Assembly: GCA_964304625.1 (NCBI GenBank)
Contig: OZ199840.1
Coordinates: 7,819,744-7,883,743 of the forward strand
Source: Kudoa neothunni
Lineage: Eukaryota > Animalia > Cnidaria
Direction: 5' to 3'
DNA length: 64,000 nt
Shown in pieces: positions 381 to 37,401 of the stretch; within the stretch, counting starts at the first letter, position 1; each line of letters opens with the position of its first letter. The translations under genes and the position numbers were made by a program. The notes under the pieces are model-generated. The model made no database searches. It was not told where the DNA came from and was given only the letters and a program-made list of their open reading frames with translations.

Positions 381-1744
381 TAGGGTTTCCCATCTAACTC
401 GGCACTTGTGCAACCAAACGCGGCACTTATGCAATTTAATCAAACACATCCTTTTAATAACACGAAAAAAGTTGATTTTAACATTCAAACCCATAATTAC
501 TATCATCACTGTTATTTATTCTAATATTATCTCTCTGTGAGAAGGCCTTGTGATATAACCAAGCATTTTTCGATAGAACCCATCACAATGTGTGTTATTT
601 CGCCTAAACATTCAGCAATAATTAATTTCAATGTTCTCGTCTTTACATTGCCTCCTTATTACTAAGTTTTTCCAGACAGAAAAAACGTTCTCAACAGGAT
701 TGAGAAAGGGTGAATATGATGGAGGCAGGTATTTTACGATTAAATTTTCCGCACCAATTATGTCCTGACGACCCCCGTAGTGATGGATTTTTGCGTTATC
801 CATAATAAATATTGGATCAAGGATCCCATTATTAAAACGGCTAGTTTTAAGCTCCAACAAGCAAGCTTTAAAGTCTTCGCCGGTTGCAGCCTTATCATGT
901 ATTTTATTATAAATCACGTAATTTTTATTGACTGCAGAAACCACAGAAATATTCCTACTACTAGCGGCCGTTACAAAACAATGAGCTGACTTGCCTCTCA
1001 ATGAGCGTCCTCTCTTGGGTCGGGTAACTACAGAAAATCCCACTTCGTCCAAAAATATCAGGCTTTCATGCATTGACGTGATTTCTAGTTCCCGAAACAT
1101 TTCTGCATTTAGGAACCGTTTTTCTATTGTGGTAGAACAATTCCTCCTTTAAGGAACTCTTACAACACACTTGAGAGTGTAATGGAATTCTCCGATTACT
1201 CTATCGACTGTACTGAGGTATACGGTAACTCCAAATTCGTCCTGGAGCTTTTGTTTCAATTCTTTTAAAATGATTAATGAATTTTCATCAATCCAACAGA
1301 TTATTTTTTCATTCTGATCAATCGAAAGAAGTGATCGTTTGTCTCCCCCTCTGGGTTTTGGAGCAAGAGTGTCGTTGTTTCTAAACTTAGATAATATCGA
1401 CTAAACCGTGGATCTCGGTAACCTCATTTCTGAAGCAATATAACTATCAGTTTTTCTATCCAATCAAAAATTGCACATTTTCCCCTTAAATCGGCAGAGA
1501 TGGTTTTTCTTAGTTTCCTTTTAGGTTGCGTATTTGATGTCGATCTAGCCGAATCGAATTGCGCTGAAACTATACACTCTGAGTCACTTGAAACTTCGCA
1601 CACATTTAAATTCAATTAGATTAACAAAAATTTGTTCGAAATCAATGCGTAGCGTTAACCGAGAATGCGCCTTGAAATCTATATCTTGGTTGCAAAAGTG
1701 CCGCGTTTGGTTGCATAAGTGTCGAGTTAGATAGGGAAACCCTA
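381..1744 (-). mobile_element. IS630/Tc1-mariner DNA transposon with a disrupted transposase
   Basis: ~54-bp TIRs: TAGGGTTTCCC(T)ATCTAACTCG... at 381-434 and its reverse complement at 1690-1744, flanked by TA at 379-380 and 1745-1746. The minus strand reads RGGDKRS..., EFHYTLK, FLDEVGF, FIMDNAKIHH, YLPPSYSPFLNPVEN (D-D-E triad), with an in-frame stop and frameshifts upstream of the 612-1100 ORF. Confidence 0.95.
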
Positions 1745-1817: not shown

Positions 1818-3095
1818 TTACAAAAAATGGGTTCTTTCTTGACGATTTTTACAAGCTTTTTTATTCTGAAAGTATAATCTGAGTAAAACAAACTTATTTC
1901 TAATTTTTTCAGACACATAAGAAACAAATTCAGGCAAAACAAGCACATTTTCTTGGTAGGTGGTATTTTTTTCAAAATATACAAAAATAGGATTGAGCCA
2001 GAAGAATATTCCGAAATTTTGTATCAAATAGTTGGGTGTGATTGGTTGTTCTTGGGGGCCATTGTCAATACAAAAGACAGTATGATCGATCATTGTTTGT
2101 GAGTCACCACGAGTAACAACCACAGTAGTATCGCCAGTGGGAATGGCCTGGGTGGAATTGGAAGTATCAATTGTTGTGGTTTGTGTGTTGTTGTCATTTC
2201 GGTTACCAGCATTATAAATCTCATATACAAACACAATTTGGTAGTACATCGTGAAAATGTGCCGACTAACCCACACACCAACAACTACATCCATAGTATA
2301 GTGCATATGACTGCAGAGGATAGTTAAAATAGCAAAGAATGCCCAAGCCCAAATAATAAACCGAAGCGGCTTATAATGTTTAGGAATATCTACAACAGAA
2401 AACATCATATAGACTTCGATTCGGCCAAATCAATTATTATAACATAAAATTTAATACAATAAGTAAAATTGCTTGCCAGTATGACCACAGAAGCAGCATG
2501 ACCACTGAACATGCTATCTCCACAACTGACCATACCAGAGTTCATCAATCCAAATGTTAATAGGACATACTTCAGATCATGCATTATTCCACGAAAACCG
2601 CGAAGAACATATTTCTATTCAACAACAACAACAACAATCAAATTACTATCATCAACCGACTATTAAATTAAATCCACAACATACTTCGGTGGGACATTTG
2701 CTTCGATCATTTGGAATAGGAAAGAATGTGGCCATCAACATTAAAAATCTCAACCAAAATGCTGTTCCAAATATCACCAATATTCTCTTTATGATCAACC
2801 ATCTCTTTTGGTGTACCACAATGAGGATAATGTTTATAGCAAAAAGTGCAACAATAGAACCTTCGGTAAACTAGACCAACCAAAGTAAATCAACAATAAT
2901 AATCATCAATAGAATTACTTCGAAAAGAAATTCGTACGCTGGAAACACATTCAACAATATGTCAGGCAATCTGTTGGCGTTGATCAGTTGGTTATCATTC
3001 ACTTTACGAGTTATAAGTAGTACAGACACAAATGTCAGTGTAGATCCAGCTGCACAATACAGCAATCCCACAAGCATCAAAAAGTACTCCCTCAT
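1818..3095 (-). CDS. Sphingomyelin synthase-family (SMS / lipid phosphate phosphatase-like) membrane protein, 4 exons, ~363 aa, no SAM domain
   Basis: Exons 3095-2919, 2870-2685, 2614-2458 and 2389-1818 are joined by GT-AG introns (48, 70 and 68 nt) that keep frame. SMS motifs present: RLPD, CGDSMFSGH and HMHYTMDV (catalytic H-H-D), plus several hydrophobic helices. Confidence 0.92.
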
Positions 3096-31480: not shown

Positions 31481-33994
31481 GGACCCAGAAAATTCTGAGT
31501 ATTGGTGTGCTACGGTTAATAATGAAATGATTGGGCAGTCAGTCTGGCTAACTTTGAAGTCAATAGCGCAATTTTCGATATCGCTTATTTATAAATGTCA
31601 ATTAATATTTATTGAAACTACAAAAAGCAATGACTAATTATATGGAAATTAATAATAATATTTAAAGTGTCCTTCACCCGAATAGAATCAAAATGGTTTG
31701 ATCTCAATCTTGTCTCTTTTAGAATCATATATGCCCCTTTTAAGTTAATTTAATCTAATCTAATGTAATATTGATTAACTTACAATATTGACTATTTATT
31801 TCCAGTTTATACGTCAATTATACGCGAGATTGAAATACCTCGAGTTTCACGTGATGCTGTTTTTGACGGAATGAAGAACTAAATATGTTAATTTTTAAGG
31901 TCCATCGACAAATTAAGATGGATCTTGTCGAAGACATTTTAAATTTATTTAGAAAATAAATATATATATATATATATATTAATTGCTTTCAAATTTTAAC
32001 GTGATACGGAGCTTGATTCAAAGTTGTGAATAGTTAAAGTTAAAAAATTAATACTTTTAAAAAAGGTGGGACGAGATAGATCAAATGTTAAGAAACACTG
32101 ATCTAGATTCCAGAAGTATTGTATCTCAAAGTAATGTTTTCACATTTTATTCAATATTATAACTTATATATAGTAGAATTGTATATGAAATATAAAACAA
32201 ACATTGAATAGCTACAAAAAAATGTAATCTCATTACCATTATATTCTTCGCACATATCGAACATCGTTTAACCGAAATTTCAATATCAGAAAGGAAAATG
32301 CTAGCTCCCGACATTTTCGAATAAACGGGATTTGACTGTATATTGTTCATAAATAATGGGAACGTTTTTGCTATGTCCCATATTAACTTAAATCTACTTA
32401 TAAATTTTATATTACTAATTTTAAACTCGTCTCTAGGTTTAATTAATTATGGGTAACATTAAATTATTTCATCAACCTAGATAATTGCGTATGTTCACCA
32501 CATTACATTGTTAACTAATATACAAACTTTTTTGTGTTACACGCACGCCAGAATACCACTAGTATAATTATTTTTATTATACTGAAAAACAAGTTATATT
32601 TGTTTGTTAACTGTACCCTCGGGATATTTTAAGAAATTCTTATTCTAACTTTCGCGCGTATTGTTATGAAATTCAATCATTTTTTGTGGGATAACTTTTT
32701 ATATATTCGAGTCATTAAAAAGATTCTTTTGATTTAAATAATTCTTCGCCAACTACAACTACTTCTGATTTCGAATCACGTAATTTTTTTGAGATAAATC
32801 GAATATTTTGGTCATTTTTATTGTTGCTATTGCTATCGTATTCAAATGTTCTTAAAGACGACTCATTATAAATAGATTCAAATATTCAGAAATATCAATA
32901 TAATCCAACGGTTCGTTTAGTTCATCATTTTTTATTTTATTTGACCTAAATTTAATTATATATTTTTATTTTGATTGTGATCCTAGTAAATCATTACCAT
33001 TGGGATTTAATTCGGTTATTTAAAAACAAATCAATACTTTTCCAGAGAGCTCTGCAGAAAAATTAAGCTATTTGTAACAAAATCAAGATCAATTATTACT
33101 GCTTTTAAAACTGTCAAAACCAAGGGATATTTTACTTTTTTGTTTTTCGATCTTTCTAAATTATGGATCACTTCAATTTGAATTTAATTCCAAATTAAGT
33201 TGTAATTTTATCTAATTAAAAGTTTGAATTTTTTATTCTCATTTTTTCAGAAAAATAATATTACAATCTAGTTAACTCATGTTGATTGAAATTGAACTGA
33301 CATTAACAATATACCTGGTAGGTCAATAGGATTTAGTCAGACAGTGATTTTGACTAATATTAGTATTTGGTTTAAGAAATATACAACTATATCAATCCAA
33401 AAAGTTTTTATCTCGATCTAAGCTATGATAGAAACGTCACCCACAACTTATCGGGACGTTACTGTAATTAGGCCCAAAAATTATTTTCATATGAAAATTT
33501 AATTGGTTTTCATTTAAAGTTTCAAAAGACTAACCACAATCTTGTTTTCATGATGTTACTTTAATTCGTTGTTAAGCGATTAACCGTCTACCTGGTTCAA
33601 AATAATTTCGCAGGTTAGTGTAGCCTACGAATATAGTAATAGGGTTTAATTAATTATTATAGGATTTAAACTTATTTTGATCTCGTAGATTATTCAACCC
33701 CAATGAATGTGGCATAATATTGATTCATAATTAAAATTGTTTTCATGCAATAGTTTTGCCATTCTTTAGCTATACAATTATTTGAATTATTGTAACATAT
33801 GGATAAATCAATAGCATACCTTACGATATTATTTTCAATGCTATTTCCATTAATATCGGCTGGGATGCGACCAATGACCATATTTTTAATGACTCGTTCC
33901 AAGTTTCTAACCTAATACACTTACGTTGGGATAAATTTAAGTGCTAACACTTCTCGTCTTTTACGAATGATAATTTGAATTAGAATTATTCGAC

Positions 33995-36465
33995 ATGAGT
34001 TGGTTCAAGCAATTAATAACTTTGTTGAGCATACTACTGCCATGGAACAGCTATATGGAGGAGCTCGATGGGCAAGTGGATGTATCATATTTTATGTTGG
34101 GTTATCTTTTAAAAACTTAATATAGTATAGCTTTGGTATTGTGTTGGAATTCCCACGTAAATATTTGGTTATATATGATTTAAACCAGCTAGAAAATGAT
34201 GAAAGCGGGCCAAAATTGGCAATATTTGAGTGGCGTAACACTGAGAATATAAATTTGAACATATTAAGTCCATTTTATAGGTTTAAAAAGATATTTCTTG
34301 ACTAAACCCGATGAAATAGCTCCAAATATAAAACTGGCCATAGACAGAGGTTTAAAAAATCCATCGCTTGATAATTTATCCAAGGGCAACGCCAACATAA
34401 CTGTAGTTGGGACAGATGAATTCCGTTATTTACTGTATATACTCGTTATTTTTCTATACTTTAATAAGTTTATATATAAATATGATCTAGAGCCACAAAT
34501 AAGGAAGCCTACCAGACAGCATGGGACATTATGAAGAAAACCGTTAGATCATACGATATCTTCGATAAAAAAATAAAGTTCGTGAGTGTTAATAGAAATG
34601 ATCAAGCCTGGTCTTATTTCTATGAAGCAATGAAAACTAAAAAAGTAAGCTACAAGCTTGATTTAACGACTAGACTATTTTTTATTCGAAAAAATATGCT
34701 CAATTGGATAAGATACTAATCTCGCAATCCTTCTTTTTCTATATTATAATACAGCTCATTCATCAATCAAAATTATTTAAATAAAATAATGTGATTTTAT
34801 CTAAAATAAAGTTTATCATTTTTCTAGTCAGTTTAAAAGTTTTATTAAACTAGAGAAATTCAACGATTGCATTAAAAAATTATTCGTTGACGATTATAAT
34901 TTCATCATATTCTAGGTTAAATCAGACGATGCATTGATTTATCTTTATCGATATTCATTCGTTTTTGTTTTTCGATTGAATACCCCAATCGCCGACCTAA
35001 CAAACTCAGACTATACCTCAAAATGCGCGGTAAGAGATGGATTCAATAATTACTTTTCAGTTTGGATTGACTGTGTGGGACCAGAATATATGGAAATCAA
35101 AGCGAATAATTATGTCTCAAGAGTATATTACATTTTTGTGATTGACTACTAACATTTCAAACAAGATGGCCAAGAAACAAAAGAAACCATTTGATTCTGA
35201 AATCAACTTCCCATGTTATCCTGTTGGAGCACGATACTACCATGGCTTAAGCGTCATTTCCAGAGATTATGAATATTGCGATCATGAAACTTACCATTCG
35301 CACAGACCTTTAAGATACACCCTAGTGGGAGCTTACAACAAAGCTGAATGCTACAAACTGATAGATAACCTTGTGAAATCAAGATATGGCTGTCAAAATA
35401 TTCCGTGGTGCTCGCTACTTGATATTCCGCAAAATATTCTAAGTTACATAAAAGATAAGATACTGGTGATTGATTTATTTTGATTTAATTTGTTTGAAAT
35501 CCTATAATTTAAATACTGTAATTTAACTTCAGTTAAACATAGATATTATTAGATTTTTTATAATATTTTTAGTTTCTATTTTTAATACGTAATTCAGATG
35601 AATATAATTAAAATATTAGAATTTTATTAGCTATATATATCTACCTCCTTATTTATAATTATTTGTGTGGTTTATTTCATTATTAGCTGAACCTCGTTTT
35701 CCCGAGACTCAATATTAGAAATGGCACCAAAATATCCCAAGCATTCTTTGATGCAGAAATTAAACGGACATGTTCCCCAAGAAGTACATCGGTGCCTGTA
35801 ATTTTATCAAAATATGTTTGTTCAATTAATATAAATCTAAGGAGATCGAATTTGAAGCTTGTTTCTACCTAACCTACCTAAATTACGTCTACGATTATTG
35901 GAAGATGAACCAACATGAATTTAAATCGATCGTAATTCAATTATTTGTATTTTCTAATACTAGAGTTAAGACTAATTACTTTAAATGGTATCAATACTTT
36001 ATATTTGGGCCGGGGGAACCTCCCACAACGATTCCACCAGAGAAAACGACTACAGCCTCTCCTCCATCAACCGAAAAATCAACAAAACCTCCACCAAAAG
36101 AAGAAATAACAACCCCTCCCCCAAAAGAAGAAATTACAACCCCTCCCCCAAAAGAAGAAATTACAACCCCTCCACCAAAAGAAATTACAACCCCTCCCCC
36201 AAAAGAAGAAATTACAACCCCTCCACCAAAAGAAGAAATTACAACCCCTCCACCAAAAGAAATTACAACCCCTCCGCCAAAAGATGAAGATGACGATTTA
36301 CCGCCGTTGGAACATCAGGGGTCGTTAAATGTTTCTTCGATTGTTGGAATTGTTTTGGGAATTCTCGTTGGTTTGATCCTACTCTTTATTATAGCATCAT
36401 TCCTAATAAGTAAGAGTAAAAAAGATTCAAAGTTATACTCTACGGTTGGCAATGAAAACATCTAA
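33995..36465 (+). CDS. GDA1/CD39 (NTPDase/apyrase)-fold protein with degenerate catalytic motifs, a Pro/Thr repeat stalk and a C-terminal TM helix
   Basis: The spliced product runs hydrophobic leader MSWFKQLITLLSILLPW, then YSFGIVLEFPQNDESGPKLAIFEW (ACR1 position), ITVVGTDEFRYLL (ACR2), VSVNRNDQAWSYF (ACR3), ALIYLYRYSFVFVF (ACR4). It keeps the family Cys scaffold (IDCVG, FPCYPVG, GAYNKAECYKLI, CQNIPWCS, ACFYLTY), then (PPPKEEITT)n, a TM segment IVGIVLGILVGLILLFIIASFLI and a short tail ending at TAA 36465. Confidence 0.8.
36088..36282 (+). repeat. Coding minisatellite of 27/24-bp units encoding PPPKE(E)ITT, 7 full units plus a partial
   Basis: CCTCC(C/A)CCAAAAGAA(GAA)ATTACAACC is repeated in frame within the last exon. 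Confidence 0.97.
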
Positions 36466-37401
36466 AATCTAAAATATTCGATTGGCTATCAATATGCTAA
36501 ACATATAATATTTAGATTAGTGATATTCTTCATAAATATTTGATTAGTTATAAGGAAATTTGAAACCAAGTTATTTTTGAGTGAGCTCTCGGAAATATGA
36601 ATCGACGTTTTTTTGAGATATATCAGCTAGAACATAAATGGCTAAATGTTGATAGATTGCAGTTTATTAATGACTATTCTACCTAATTTATTTCATAAAA
36701 TTGGGCATCTTATTAAAGTAAAATTTATTTCTCATTGGTTGTTTAGGTTTTTATTATATGTGATAATTATTGGAGGAGCCGATCTATAATACATACTTCC
36801 TTAAGTTATAATTCCCCATTATTTCTTTAGTTATCCCACAGTATAAAAATCTGTAAATCAACAATAAAAGCACTAATCAAATTATATATTAAGTTAACTA
36901 ATTTAAAATAATTAAATTCTTCCATTCCCGAATTATTTAATTGCGTTCTGAGAATAATATATTACGTACAAATAGTAAATTATGACGATTTTAAAGGTTA
37001 TGTTTCTCAAAAAAAATATTTTAACCATTATTATCTTTGAATTCCGTGAAAAAATGAAAATCACATAAAAATCGTATTCTTACCTATAATAACCACTTAA
37101 CATTTCACTCTATTTTTAAAAAGAATCAAACAATTTGTTACATCCGCTTAGAAAATAATAGCTTAATATGATCACAATGTTTACATCGATCGTTTTATTT
37201 GTGTGTGTGCGCCAATTTTGATGTCAACTAGTAATTTTCGGAATTATTTCGCATCTAAATATATTCAAAGCTTTTAAACGAGGTAAAATCATTTGAGTTT
37301 TAGTATGTATATTTTTCTCAGTGAAGTATATAAATTATATATAACTAGCGCGAACTAACCAGCGTTGCTTGGGGACGATTTCGCATAGAGACATTTCTTA
37401 A

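What the first reader, a model, noticed from the sequence alone, without database searches (positions are those of the whole stretch)
33995..36465. Pseudo-apyrase on a stalk: CD39/NTPDase fold with all four catalytic motifs replaced, displayed as a type I membrane protein
Seen: the spliced product keeps the order, spacing and cysteine scaffold of GDA1/CD39 ecto-NTPDases, but ACR1-4 are each substituted. ACR1 DAGSS becomes EFPQNDES, ACR2 ATAG becomes GTDE, ACR3 GQEEG becomes RNDQA (catalytic Glu lost), and ACR4 DLGGAS becomes YLYRYS (bulky residues in the phosphate-2 loop). The domain is followed by a Pro/Thr repeat stalk, one TM helix and a short tail containing YSTV (a YxxPhi-type sorting motif). 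Known: active NTPDases need the two actin-like phosphate loops and the ACR3 Glu, and cell-surface CD39-type enzymes sit close to the membrane between two TM helices without a mucin-like stalk. Inference: the reading frame is intact through the exons traced, so this looks like a maintained, catalytically dead ectodomain repurposed as an adhesin, receptor, decoy or nucleotide sensor on the cell surface. This is the best candidate for an undescribed system in the window.
Basis: partly seen in the sequence, partly recalled or inferred. Interest (0 to 1): 0.8.

Follow-up and report, generated by a model that had tools for sequence, protein, structure and literature searches.

The report
Dead apyrase-like surface protein family member
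This intact nine-exon gene of a fish-muscle parasite (very probably the myxozoan Kudoa neothunni) encodes a membrane protein whose outer domain descends from the ATP-splitting enzyme CD39/NTPDase but has lost every catalytic motif, and it is one of at least 43 such genes in a genome of only about 5,300 predicted proteins, so it looks like a major, undescribed surface-protein family rather than a one-off.

Summary
The gene is real and much as described: nine open exons (33995-36465, +) and eight GT-AG introns of 39-271 bp. Exon GC is 38%; intron GC is 16-26%.

Descent from NTPDase is shown for the cysteine-rich exon 6. Its family profile matches 45 true NTPDases (hhalign Prob 94.7%, E 6e-8). 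In the PDB it finds only NTPDase1/2. It also matches the genome's own CD39-type gene.

The N-terminal exons are only colinear: weak hits fall on the ACR1, ACR4 and ACR3-4 regions (P 0.01-0.045). Exons 3 and 4 are not securely placed.

No canonical ACR motif exists in this gene or in 28 paralogous loci, while two other genes of the genome keep them.

The tail end is a 7.7-copy, 27-bp Pro/Thr/Glu repeat stalk, one TM helix and an 18-residue tail containing YSTV.

The main correction is that this is not a singleton. It belongs to a fast-diverging family of at least 43 members, and earlier scan notes flagged such genes elsewhere in this genome.

Expression and selection are untested: no parasite RNA was available.

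Best reading: a non-catalytic, glycosylated surface protein family derived from an ecto-NTPDase. This is a new variant of a known kind.

The parts
33995..34081 (+). Exon 1. It holds the first ATG after an in-frame stop and a 29-aa signal-peptide-like N-terminus with the hydrophobic core LITLLSILLPW.
   Evidence: The donor GTATCA lies at 34082. No signal-peptide predictor was available, so cleavage is inferred.
34126..34234 (+). Exon 2. It encodes a beta-hairpin equivalent to the ACR1 (phosphate-1 loop) region: FGIVLEFPRKYLVIYD...ESGPKLAIFEW. No DxGSS motif is present.
   Evidence: The best hhalign hit of this exon and of an E2-like family alignment falls on the ACR1 region of true NTPDases (P 0.097; P 0.02). 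The register is ambiguous.
34281..34434 (+). Exon 3. It ends in VVGTDEFRYL, where NTPDases have ATAGMRLL (ACR2).
   Evidence: The motif TDE[FY]RxL is invariant in 7 subfamily members. hhalign placed it on ACR2 in one run (P 0.14) and elsewhere in another, so the placement is inconclusive.
34491..34644 (+). Exon 4. It contains VNRNDQAWSYFYEAM, where ACR3 (GxEEG...W..NYL) is expected. The catalytic Glu position is Gln.
   Evidence: By-eye register only for this subfamily; hhalign is off-place. In the other subfamily the fused E4+E5 exon aligns over ACR3-ACR4 of NTPDases (117 columns, P 0.01).
34916..35122 (+). Exon 5. It holds the ACR4-equivalent strand LIYLYRYSFVFVF (DLGGAS becomes YLYRYS) and the conserved ...WIDCVG cysteine. 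An alternative donor lies at 35113.
   Evidence: A family alignment of 24 members aligns to the ACR4 columns of 45 NTPDases (P 0.045). A profile search against the PDB was negative.
35166..35465 (+). Exon 6. This is the cysteine-rich core of the C-terminal lobe (PC...C...VGxYNxxxC...C...C). It is the part whose NTPDase ancestry is demonstrated.
   Evidence: hhalign Prob 94.7%, E 6e-8. The only PDB hits are NTPDase1 (E 0.0015) and NTPDase2. Three true GDA1_CD39 fragments were hit in 1.8 billion proteins. The genome's own CD39-type exon matches at E 3.5e-6. An AF2 model of the exon ranks NTPDase1 first, though weakly.
35687..35797 (+). Exon 7. It contains ...RTCSPR..., equivalent to the FC..W cysteine region of NTPDases.
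   Evidence: Best hhalign placement is colinear (template 358-403) but not significant.
35842..35931 (+). Exon 8. ACFYLTYLNYVY is equivalent to the YCF..Y...LL helix before ACR5.
   Evidence: The placement is colinear (template 416-437). The same region scores weakly against an NTPDase HMM in six paralogues.
35932..35970 (+). Intron 8. It is 39 nt long, has no stop codon and is a multiple of 3, so it could instead be coding (+13 aa).
   Evidence: This cannot be decided without RNA.
35971..36009 (+). Start of exon 9. FKWYQYFIFG is an ACR5 remnant: the Trp is kept but the GWxLG motif is lost.
   Evidence: By-eye comparison with the consensus ...DWTLGALL. A paralogue has IPWSAFLRG at this point.
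36010..36339 (+). Pro/Thr/Ser/Glu/Lys-rich stalk. It includes the tandem array 36088-36288 (27-bp unit, 7.7 copies, PPPKEEITT) and an acidic DEDDD patch.
   Evidence: 85% P/T/S/E/K, and the length variants are all in frame. Pfam gives only weak, sub-threshold Podoplanin and Glycophorin hits.
36340..36408 (+). Single transmembrane helix (IVGIVLGILVGLILLFIIASFLI).
   Evidence: Kyte-Doolittle 19-residue mean of 3.26, the only such segment in the gene.
36409..36465 (+). An 18-residue basic cytoplasmic tail with YSTV (36436-36447), followed by the stop codon.
   Evidence: The motif is not conserved in paralogue tails.

Best explanation
The gene encodes a catalytically inactive descendant of a CD39-type ecto-NTPDase, displayed as a single-pass surface glycoprotein.

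Inferred course of events:
- The short hydrophobic N-terminus takes the protein into the ER.
- A two-lobed NTPDase-like ectodomain of about 390 aa folds, held by the conserved cysteines of the C-terminal lobe.
- A stalk of about 100 residues (PPPKEEITT repeats, presumably O-glycosylated) lifts it off the membrane.
- One TM helix and an 18-residue tail anchor it.

Both phosphate-binding loops (ACR1, ACR4), the catalytic-base motif (ACR3) and ACR2/ACR5 are replaced, so it cannot work as an apyrase. The fold serves as a stable scaffold.

The gene is one of at least 43 fast-diverging paralogues (20-30% identity) in a parasite with about 5,300 predicted proteins. The most likely role is therefore at the parasite surface: a variable coat, adhesion or recognition protein at the host interface.

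Shown: the gene structure, the NTPDase ancestry of the C-lobe, the absence of the motifs, the family, and the stalk and TM.
Inferred: the fold of the N-lobe, topology, glycosylation, expression and the surface role.
For: Gene model and composition:
- The nine exons are open and the introns are GT-AG.
- Exon GC of 37.7% and intron sizes of 39-56 bp for six of the eight introns match the values published for K. neothunni.

C-lobe homology:
- The E6 family profile matches 45 true NTPDases (Prob 94.7%, E 6e-8).
- The only PDB hits are NTPDase1/2.
- The exhaustive 1.8-billion-protein search returned true GDA1_CD39 fragments at E 7.5e-5 to 3.4e-4.
- An HMM of 76 true NTPDases scores window E6 at 18 bits, and no shuffle of 300 reaches it.
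- The genome's own canonical CD39-type exon matches at E 3.5e-6.

Colinearity of the other exons:
- 5 of 6 best hhalign placements fall in the expected regions. By column-shuffle controls the chance of this is about 6e-5.
- The fused E4+E5 exon family spans ACR3-ACR4 (P 0.01).
- E5 falls on ACR4 (P 0.045) and E2 on ACR1 (P 0.02).

Motif loss:
- No ACR1-5 pattern occurs on the sense strand of this gene or of 28 family loci. L001 and L003 carry them.

Family and architecture:
- There are 43 hits in the genome.
- A TM helix plus a short basic tail lies downstream in at least 17 of 28 loci.
- The same layout occurs on a metagenomic contig, L017.
- The stalk and TM are documented.
Against: - No exon reaches Pfam GDA1_CD39 even at E<=10. 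However, the Cys exon of the genome's canonical NTPDase fails too.
- E3 and E4 of this gene are not reproducibly placed on ACR2/ACR3.
- The E5 profile finds no NTPDase in the PDB.
- There is no RNA evidence: 0 reads in three RNA runs, which probably lack the parasite.
- pN/pS on close paralogue pairs rests on only 2-13 differences.
- The whole-protein (joined) model was never searched or folded.
- The surface role is inferred from architecture and family pattern only.
Confidence: 0.68

Rival explanations
1. Nucleotide-binding but non-hydrolysing sensor or decoy. The cleft would still bind ATP/ADP (abundant around a parasite that lives in muscle) and signal or sequester it.
For: The fold is derived from a nucleotide-binding enzyme. 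The ACR2-like TDE[FY]RxL and ACR3-like DQ[GA]W motifs are conserved within the window's subfamily, so something at the former cleft is constrained.
Against: Both phosphate loops are replaced by bulky hydrophobic residues (YLYRYS; EFPRKY). These positions vary freely across the family. The conserved columns are cysteines and core residues.
Confidence: 0.08
2. A decaying or silent gene copy (young pseudogene) of an expanded family, with no function of its own.
For: There is no RNA evidence. No close orthologue or paralogue exists (best about 30% identity). pN/pS in close paralogue pairs is not clearly low (0.24-0.39 on 2-13 differences).
Against: All nine exons are open in a genome of about 30% GC. 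All eight introns keep GT-AG and consistent phases. The exon/intron GC contrast (38% against 16-26%) is preserved. The repeat array varies only by whole codons.
Confidence: 0.1
3. Mosaic protein. Only the C-terminal lobe (exons 5-8) derives from an NTPDase, and the N-terminal 200 residues are unrelated sequence.
For: Only E6 is individually significant. E3 and E4 are not reproducibly placed. Exons 2-4 lack the N-lobe cysteine pair.
Against: E2 and E2-like exons land on ACR1. The fused E4+E5 exon of the sister subfamily aligns continuously from just after ACR2 to past ACR4. The joint colinearity has a chance of about 6e-5. Domain length and spacing fit a whole NTPDase.
Confidence: 0.08
4. Still an active nucleotidase (or other hydrolase) that uses relocated catalytic residues.
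For: Some proteins classed as pseudoenzymes have migrated catalytic residues (general knowledge; review PMC10211241 listed). An Asp (IYD) and SGPK lie near the ACR1 position in the hhalign register.
Against: All five ACRs are non-canonical, the ACR3 Glu is Gln, and ACR4 has no Gly. The genome keeps two canonical NTPDases for the enzymatic job.
Confidence: 0.03

Closest known systems
Vertebrate cell-surface NTPDase1/2/3/8 (CD39 family; structures 3ZX3, 3CJ1)
   Same: The cysteine-rich C-lobe segment aligns with all five cysteines of that stretch. The overall order and length of the ectodomain are colinear.
   Different: - ACR1-5 are all lost.
- The N-lobe cysteine pair is absent.
- It has a signal-peptide-like N-terminus and one C-terminal TM helix instead of two flanking TM helices.
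- A repeat stalk of about 100 residues is inserted between the domain and the membrane.
- It has at least 43 paralogues rather than a handful.
The genome's own canonical NTPDases: L003 (C1:0.885 Mb, two-TM CD39 type) and L001 (C2:7.278 Mb)
   Same: They share the ancestry. The Cys exon of L003 matches the family profile (Prob 87.6%, E 3.5e-6).
   Different: L003 and L001 keep DAGSTG, ATAGMR (L001), D/ExGGxS and WTLG, so they are the likely working enzymes. The family members keep none of these motifs.
Legume lectin-nucleotide phosphohydrolase (DbLNP/GS52), an apyrase that also binds Nod-factor carbohydrate (from my own knowledge, not checked here)
   Same: It is a precedent for an NTPDase fold used as a surface ligand-binding or receptor protein.
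   Different: LNP is still catalytically active, keeps its ACRs, has no mucin stalk and is not a large family.
Expanded families of inactive enzyme homologues on parasite surfaces, for example the inactive trans-sialidase-like proteins of Trypanosoma cruzi (from my own knowledge), and the expanded surface families reported for the myxozoan Sphaerospora molnari (bioRxiv 10.64898/2026.02.11.705288)
   Same: In both cases a parasite has a large, fast-diverging gene family of single-pass or anchored surface proteins. In the trans-sialidase case the enzyme fold is kept while catalysis is lost, and repeat regions are attached.
   Different: The fold is different (actin-like NTPDase fold). The S. molnari paper reports VSP-, RIFIN/STEVOR- and ETRAMP-like families and mentions neither CD39 nor nucleoside phosphatases.
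Mucin-stalk type I proteins (podoplanin, glycophorin A)
   Same: A Pro/Thr-rich extracellular stretch followed by one TM helix and a short tail. Pfam gives weak hits (PF05808 E 2.2e-4, PF01102 E 0.012).
   Different: The scores are below the Pfam cut-offs (22 against 30 bits). The likeness is compositional, and these proteins carry no enzyme-derived head domain.

Membership tests
GDA1/CD39 nucleoside phosphatase family (Pfam PF01150) | Match to the Pfam model above its gathering score | tested here: not met
   The six-frame search of the genome finds only L001/L002 and L003, nothing in the window. The exon-by-exon hmmscan at E<=10 gives no hit. The joined protein was not tested. The Cys exon of the canonical L003 gene also fails, so the test is insensitive in this lineage.
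GDA1/CD39 nucleoside phosphatase family (Pfam PF01150) | Profile-level homology of the C-terminal lobe (PF01150 positions about 237-302) | tested here: met
   hhalign Prob 94.7%, E 6e-8. The PDB search returns only NTPDase1/2, best E 0.0015. True GDA1_CD39 fragments are hit in the exhaustive search. L003 matches at E 3.5e-6.
GDA1/CD39 nucleoside phosphatase family (Pfam PF01150) | Homology of the N-terminal lobe (ACR1-ACR3 region) | tested here: inconclusive
   E2 falls on ACR1 (P 0.02-0.1). The fused E4+E5 exon of the sister subfamily falls on ACR3-ACR4 (P 0.01). Joint colinearity has a chance of about 6e-5. However, E3 and E4 of this gene are not reproducibly placed.
GDA1/CD39 nucleoside phosphatase family (Pfam PF01150) | Five apyrase conserved regions (DxGSSxT, ATAGxR, GxEEG, DxGGxSxQ, GWxLG) | tested here: not met
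   A pattern search of all frames of the locus and of 28 family loci finds none on the sense strand, while L001 and L003 carry them. The equivalents here are EFPRKY / D...SGPK, GTDEFR, RNDQA, YLYRYS and KWYQY.
GDA1/CD39 nucleoside phosphatase family (Pfam PF01150) | Ca/Mg-dependent hydrolysis of nucleoside tri- and diphosphates | not testable with these tools
   This needs the recombinant ectodomain and a phosphate-release assay.
Cell-surface NTPDase1/2/3/8 subgroup | Ectodomain held between an N-terminal and a C-terminal TM helix, close to the membrane | tested here: not met
   There is only one strong TM segment (in exon 9). The N-terminal hydrophobic core is about 11 residues (KD mean 0.81). 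A stalk of about 100 residues separates the domain from the TM helix. L003 does have both helices.
Cell-surface NTPDase1/2/3/8 subgroup | Conserved ectodomain cysteines | tested here: met
   The five cysteines of E6 align with those of rat NTPDase1. One each in E5, E7 and E8 sits at colinear positions. The N-lobe pair is absent, as exons 2-4 have no Cys, so the feature is met for the C-lobe only.
Pseudoenzyme (inactive homologue of an enzyme family) | Homologous to an enzyme family and lacking its catalytic residues | tested here: met
   See the rows above: the C-lobe homology is met and the ACR motifs are absent.
Pseudoenzyme (inactive homologue of an enzyme family) | Expressed and maintained by selection (not a pseudogene) | tested here: inconclusive
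   The frames are open, the splice sites are intact and the exon/intron GC contrast is preserved. However, no reads were found in three RNA runs, which is no test, and pN/pS on close paralogue pairs rests on too few differences.
Type I mucin-stalk membrane glycoprotein | Cleavable N-terminal signal peptide | tested here: inconclusive
   The N-terminus is basic with an 11-residue hydrophobic core. No signal-peptide predictor was available.
Type I mucin-stalk membrane glycoprotein | Pro/Thr/Ser-rich repeat stalk, one TM helix and a short cytoplasmic tail | tested here: met
   Tandem Repeats Finder reports a 27-bp unit in 7.7 copies. The stalk is 85% P/T/S/E/K, the TM KD mean is 3.26 and the tail is 18 residues. 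Glycosylation itself is not testable here.

The most novel reading that the evidence does not exclude
The family of at least 43 members is the main variable surface coat or host-interface system of Kudoa. An ecto-NTPDase was duplicated many times, stripped of catalysis and put on glycosylated stalks, and its loops diversify under host pressure, possibly with selective expression of family members. This would be the first case of the NTPDase (actin-like ATPase) fold serving as a variant surface or adhesion scaffold, and one of the first molecular handles on how a cnidarian parasite meets its fish host.
Probability: 0.2. Interest if true: 0.8.

Novelty: new variant of a known kind. Interest (0 to 1): 0.6.

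Why it matters
- **A poorly understood parasite group.** Myxozoans are economically important fish parasites whose genomes are full of unannotated, fast-evolving genes. Almost nothing is known about their surface molecules.
- **A candidate for the host interface.** A family of 43 or more members is nearly 1% of about 5,300 predicted proteins. It would be an obvious candidate for host interaction, diagnostics or vaccine antigens.
- **A new pseudoenzyme lineage.** NTPDases are not a textbook source of inactive homologues, so this would add one.
- **An annotation lesson.** The genes are invisible to exon-wise Pfam and probably to hint-based gene prediction, so they are likely missing from current annotations.

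Tried and rejected
Searches that found nothing or too little:
- **Pfam, exon by exon.** No GDA1_CD39 hit, and nothing in the window in the six-frame genome search with PF01150. The canonical L003 Cys exon also fails, so the test is uninformative.
- **RNA evidence.** Three RNA runs with the same species label gave 0 reads. The label is probably the host fish, so this is no test.
- **Exhaustive protein search with the E6 profile**. It found no full-length annotated relative, only exon-sized ORFs, three real NTPDase fragments and repeat-driven false hits (P0002, P0023).
- **E5 profile against the PDB.** No NTPDase hit.
- **Exons E2, E3, E4, E5, E7 and E8 singly against an HMM of 76 NTPDases.** No score above the shuffles.
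- **E3 and E4 subfamily alignments against NTPDases with the tool's hhalign.** Off-place and not significant.
- **E3-like exon of the large subfamily.** Off-place.
- **Protein-language-model look-alikes of a fused E4+E5 exon.** No usable hit.
- **Nematode SL1 RNA search, to place the organism.** Nothing found, and the control was uninformative.
- **pN/pS on near-identical paralogue pairs.** Too few differences.
- **Literature searches** for myxozoan NTPDase or apyrase families. Nothing relevant.

Steps not done:
- A MAFFT alignment of the fused exon with half-length rows (A4) was misaligned, so I did not fold it.
Whole-protein Pfam/HHpred, topology prediction and a full ectodomain model are therefore missing.

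Idea rejected:
- A hidden exon restoring DxG motifs. No such pattern occurs in any frame of 33500-37000.
Full report
**The gene**

Reading the three forward frames of 33900-36500 and locating splice signals gives a nine-exon model on the + strand:

| Exon | Coordinates |
|---|---|
| E1 | 33995-34081 |
| E2 | 34126-34234 |
| E3 | 34281-34434 |
| E4 | 34491-34644 |
| E5 | 34916-35122 (an alternative donor at 35113 is also in phase) |
| E6 | 35166-35465 |
| E7 | 35687-35797 |
| E8 | 35842-35931 |
| E9 | 35971-36465 |

- All eight introns begin with GT and end with AG. Six are 39-56 bp; the other two are 271 and 221 bp.
- The phases are consistent and the product is about 568 aa.
- Exon GC is 37.7% against 16-26% in the introns.
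- Intron 8 (39 nt) has no stop and is a multiple of three, so it may instead be coding.
- The ATG at 33995 is the first after an in-frame stop.

**The organism**

The window lies on contig 3 of a 40.26-Mb assembly of four contigs. I checked that lead against Weber, Paulini and Blaxter 2025 (PMC12239612). The paper reports:
- three chromosome scaffolds plus a circular mitochondrial genome;
- genomic GC 30.4% and exonic GC 36.8%;
- median intron 49 bp;
- k-mer cover about 7;
- one chromosome end with (TAAACC)n;
- 5,316 predicted proteins.

Here I find:
- four contigs;
- the exon and intron values given above;
- depth 8.6 in the DNA run that holds the locus;
- (TAAACC)n at exactly one place, the end of contig 2.

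The identification is very probable. It also explains why RNA runs filed under the same species label, which is evidently the host fish, gave no reads. The paper itself says very few host transcriptome reads map to the parasite.

**Is the ectodomain an NTPDase? The C-terminal lobe**

Pfam does not say so. There is no PF01150 hit in the window in a six-frame genome search or exon by exon at E<=10. That test is insensitive in this lineage, because the cysteine-rich exon of the genome's own canonical CD39-type gene (L003) also fails at E<=0.01.

Profiles do better. Exon 6 has paralogues in the genome.
- **Exhaustive library.** An 11-row profile of exon 6 (A1), searched against 1.84 billion representative proteins, returned only 26 hits. 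These were exon-sized ORFs from AT-rich metagenomic contigs and three fragments that Pfam confirms as GDA1_CD39 positions 237-302 (E 7.5e-5 to 3.4e-4).
- **PDB.** With 35 rows (A3), the only PDB sequences found at E<=10 are rat NTPDase1 (E 0.0015) and NTPDase2. All five cysteines of the stretch are aligned.
- **Profile against profile.** Comparison with 45 true NTPDases (A5) gives Prob 94.7%, E 6e-8.
- **The genome's own gene.** Against the L003 exon the result is Prob 87.6%, E 3.5e-6.
- **Shuffle control.** An HMM of 76 true NTPDases scores window E6 at 16-18 bits, while 300 shuffles stay below 3.2.

The C-terminal lobe is therefore NTPDase-derived.

**Is the ectodomain an NTPDase? The other exons**

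None of the other exons is significant alone. Their best profile-profile placements are nevertheless colinear:

| Exon | Placement on the NTPDase profile |
|---|---|
| E2 | ACR1 region |
| E3 | ACR2 |
| E5 | ACR4 |
| E7, E8 | between E6 and ACR5 |
| E4 | off-place |

Column-shuffled controls give a 4-19% chance per exon of landing in the expected region. Five of six doing so has a chance of about 6e-5. I set the region limits after seeing the data, so that figure is generous.

Deeper family alignments help:
- E5 (24 members) aligns to the ACR4 columns (P 0.045).
- An E2-like alignment hits ACR1 (P 0.02).
- In a sister subfamily E4 and E5 are one exon. Its 38-row profile aligns over 117 columns, from just after ACR2 through ACR3 and ACR4 (P 0.01). 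That ends where E6 begins.

Against this, E3 and E4 of the window's own subfamily were placed elsewhere by the tool's hhalign, and the E5 profile finds no NTPDase in the PDB. I rate whole-domain homology as likely but proven only from ACR4 onwards.

**Motifs**

In the alignments above, YLYRYS lies exactly under DLGGAS and GTDEFR under ATAGMR. 'EFPQNDES' is not in the product: the text is GIVLEFPRKYLVIYDLNQLENDESG. The ACR1 register is also ambiguous.

Independently of any alignment, a pattern search of every frame finds no ACR1-5 motif on the sense strand of this locus or of 28 family loci. The genome's two canonical genes carry them:
- L001 has DAGSTG, ATAGMR and ELGGAS.
- L003 has DAGSTGTR, DIGGSS and NWTLG, plus two TM helices.

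Catalytic death is therefore a safe inference from sequence.

**The family**

The E6 profile has 43 hits at E<=0.01 on all three chromosomes. Some lie in tandem clusters, for example C3:10.84-10.87 Mb.
- Members are 20-30% identical.
- They share intron positions.
- In at least 17 of 28 loci they end in a TM helix with a short basic tail, often preceded by a Ser/Thr/Pro-rich stretch.
- A 6-kb metagenomic contig (L017) shows the same layout.

Earlier first-stage notes of this scan flagged similar 'pseudo-apyrase' genes at other places of this genome. One of them coincides with locus L028, which I analysed.

**The rest of the protein**

- E1 is signal-peptide-like, with an 11-residue hydrophobic core.
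- E9 begins with an ACR5 remnant (FKWYQYFIFG).
- It continues with a stalk that is 85% P/T/S/E/K, including 7.7 in-frame copies of a 27-bp unit.
- Then come one TM helix (KD 3.26) and an 18-residue tail with YSTV. That motif is not conserved in paralogues.
- The repeat array is not spanned by any short-read contig, so its copy number rests on the long-read assembly.

Compared with CD39, the C-terminal TM helix may be the old TM2. On that view the N-terminal helix shrank to a signal peptide and a stalk was inserted.

**Mechanism and rivals**

My best reading is a non-catalytic surface glycoprotein that uses the disulfide-braced NTPDase fold as a scaffold. It would be part of an expanded, fast-diverging host-interface family.

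| Rival | My probability | Main argument against |
|---|---|---|
| Nucleotide sensor or decoy | 0.08 | The phosphate-loop positions are bulky and unconserved |
| Silent pseudogene | 0.1 | Nine open exons, intact splice sites, in-frame repeats |
| Mosaic with an unrelated N-terminal half | 0.08 | Colinearity of the N-terminal exons with NTPDases |
| Still active | 0.03 | All five motifs are non-canonical |

Selection could not be measured. Close paralogue pairs differ at only 2-13 coding sites.

**Novelty**

Full-text searches found no paper linking myxozoans with NTPDase, and only one irrelevant paper mentioning apyrase. The K. neothunni genome paper does not discuss gene families. A 2026 preprint on Sphaerospora molnari reports other expanded surface families and mentions neither CD39 nor nucleoside phosphatases. 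This is a new variant of known kinds: NTPDases, pseudoenzymes and expanded parasite surface families.

**Limits**

Every search was exon by exon, by reference. The following therefore remain to be done:
- a whole-protein Pfam or HHpred score;
- signal-peptide and topology prediction;
- a full ectodomain model superposed on NTPDase1/2.

No RNA of the parasite was available.

Noticed in passing
window 612-1100 (-): ORF for a DDE_3 (Tc1/mariner-type) transposase, PF13358 E 1.3e-23.
   Followed up: partly
window 1818-2408 (-): Exon-sized ORF with the PAP2_C/PAP2 domain (sphingomyelin-synthase-like), PF14360 E 4e-9.
   Followed up: partly
window 35932-35970: Intron 8 of the gene is 39 nt long, has no stop and is in frame, so retention would add 13 residues (VIQLFVFSNTRVK) that read like a beta-strand before the ACR5 remnant. 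It may be coding rather than intron.
   Followed up: partly
window 36088-36288: The 27-bp repeat array is not spanned by any Logan contig of the DNA run. The pieces break at 36138 and 36246, so the copy number may be uncertain or polymorphic.
   Followed up: no
L003 = G000:C1:884130-887228 (-): A canonical CD39-type ecto-NTPDase gene with N- and C-terminal TM helices, ACR1 DAGSTGTR, ACR4 DIGGSS and ACR5 NWTLG. It is the likely living representative of the ancestor of the dead family. Its Cys-rich exon is missed by Pfam.
   Followed up: partly
L017 (ENA ERZ28624939 scaffold_984) 1299-1541 and 2459-2653; also L016, L018, L019: AT-rich metagenomic contigs carry exon-6-like ORFs. On L017 there is also a downstream Ser/Thr/Pro-rich stretch plus a TM helix. 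The family therefore exists in at least one other, unnamed organism.
   Followed up: partly
G000:C2:12039536-12040069: The only (TAAACC)n array of the assembly sits at the end of contig 2. This matches the single telomeric end reported for Kudoa neothunni (PMC12239612).
   Followed up: yes
L026/L027 (C2:7.50 and 7.53 Mb) and L038/L039 (C2:11.54 and 11.58 Mb): These are pairs of family genes that are identical or nearly identical in their coding parts, 24-40 kb apart. They are either very recent duplications or uncollapsed haplotypes.
   Followed up: partly
L001 2887-3174: A stretch of the locus next to the canonical NTPDase gene on contig 2 reads as N, that is, withheld or masked.
   Followed up: no
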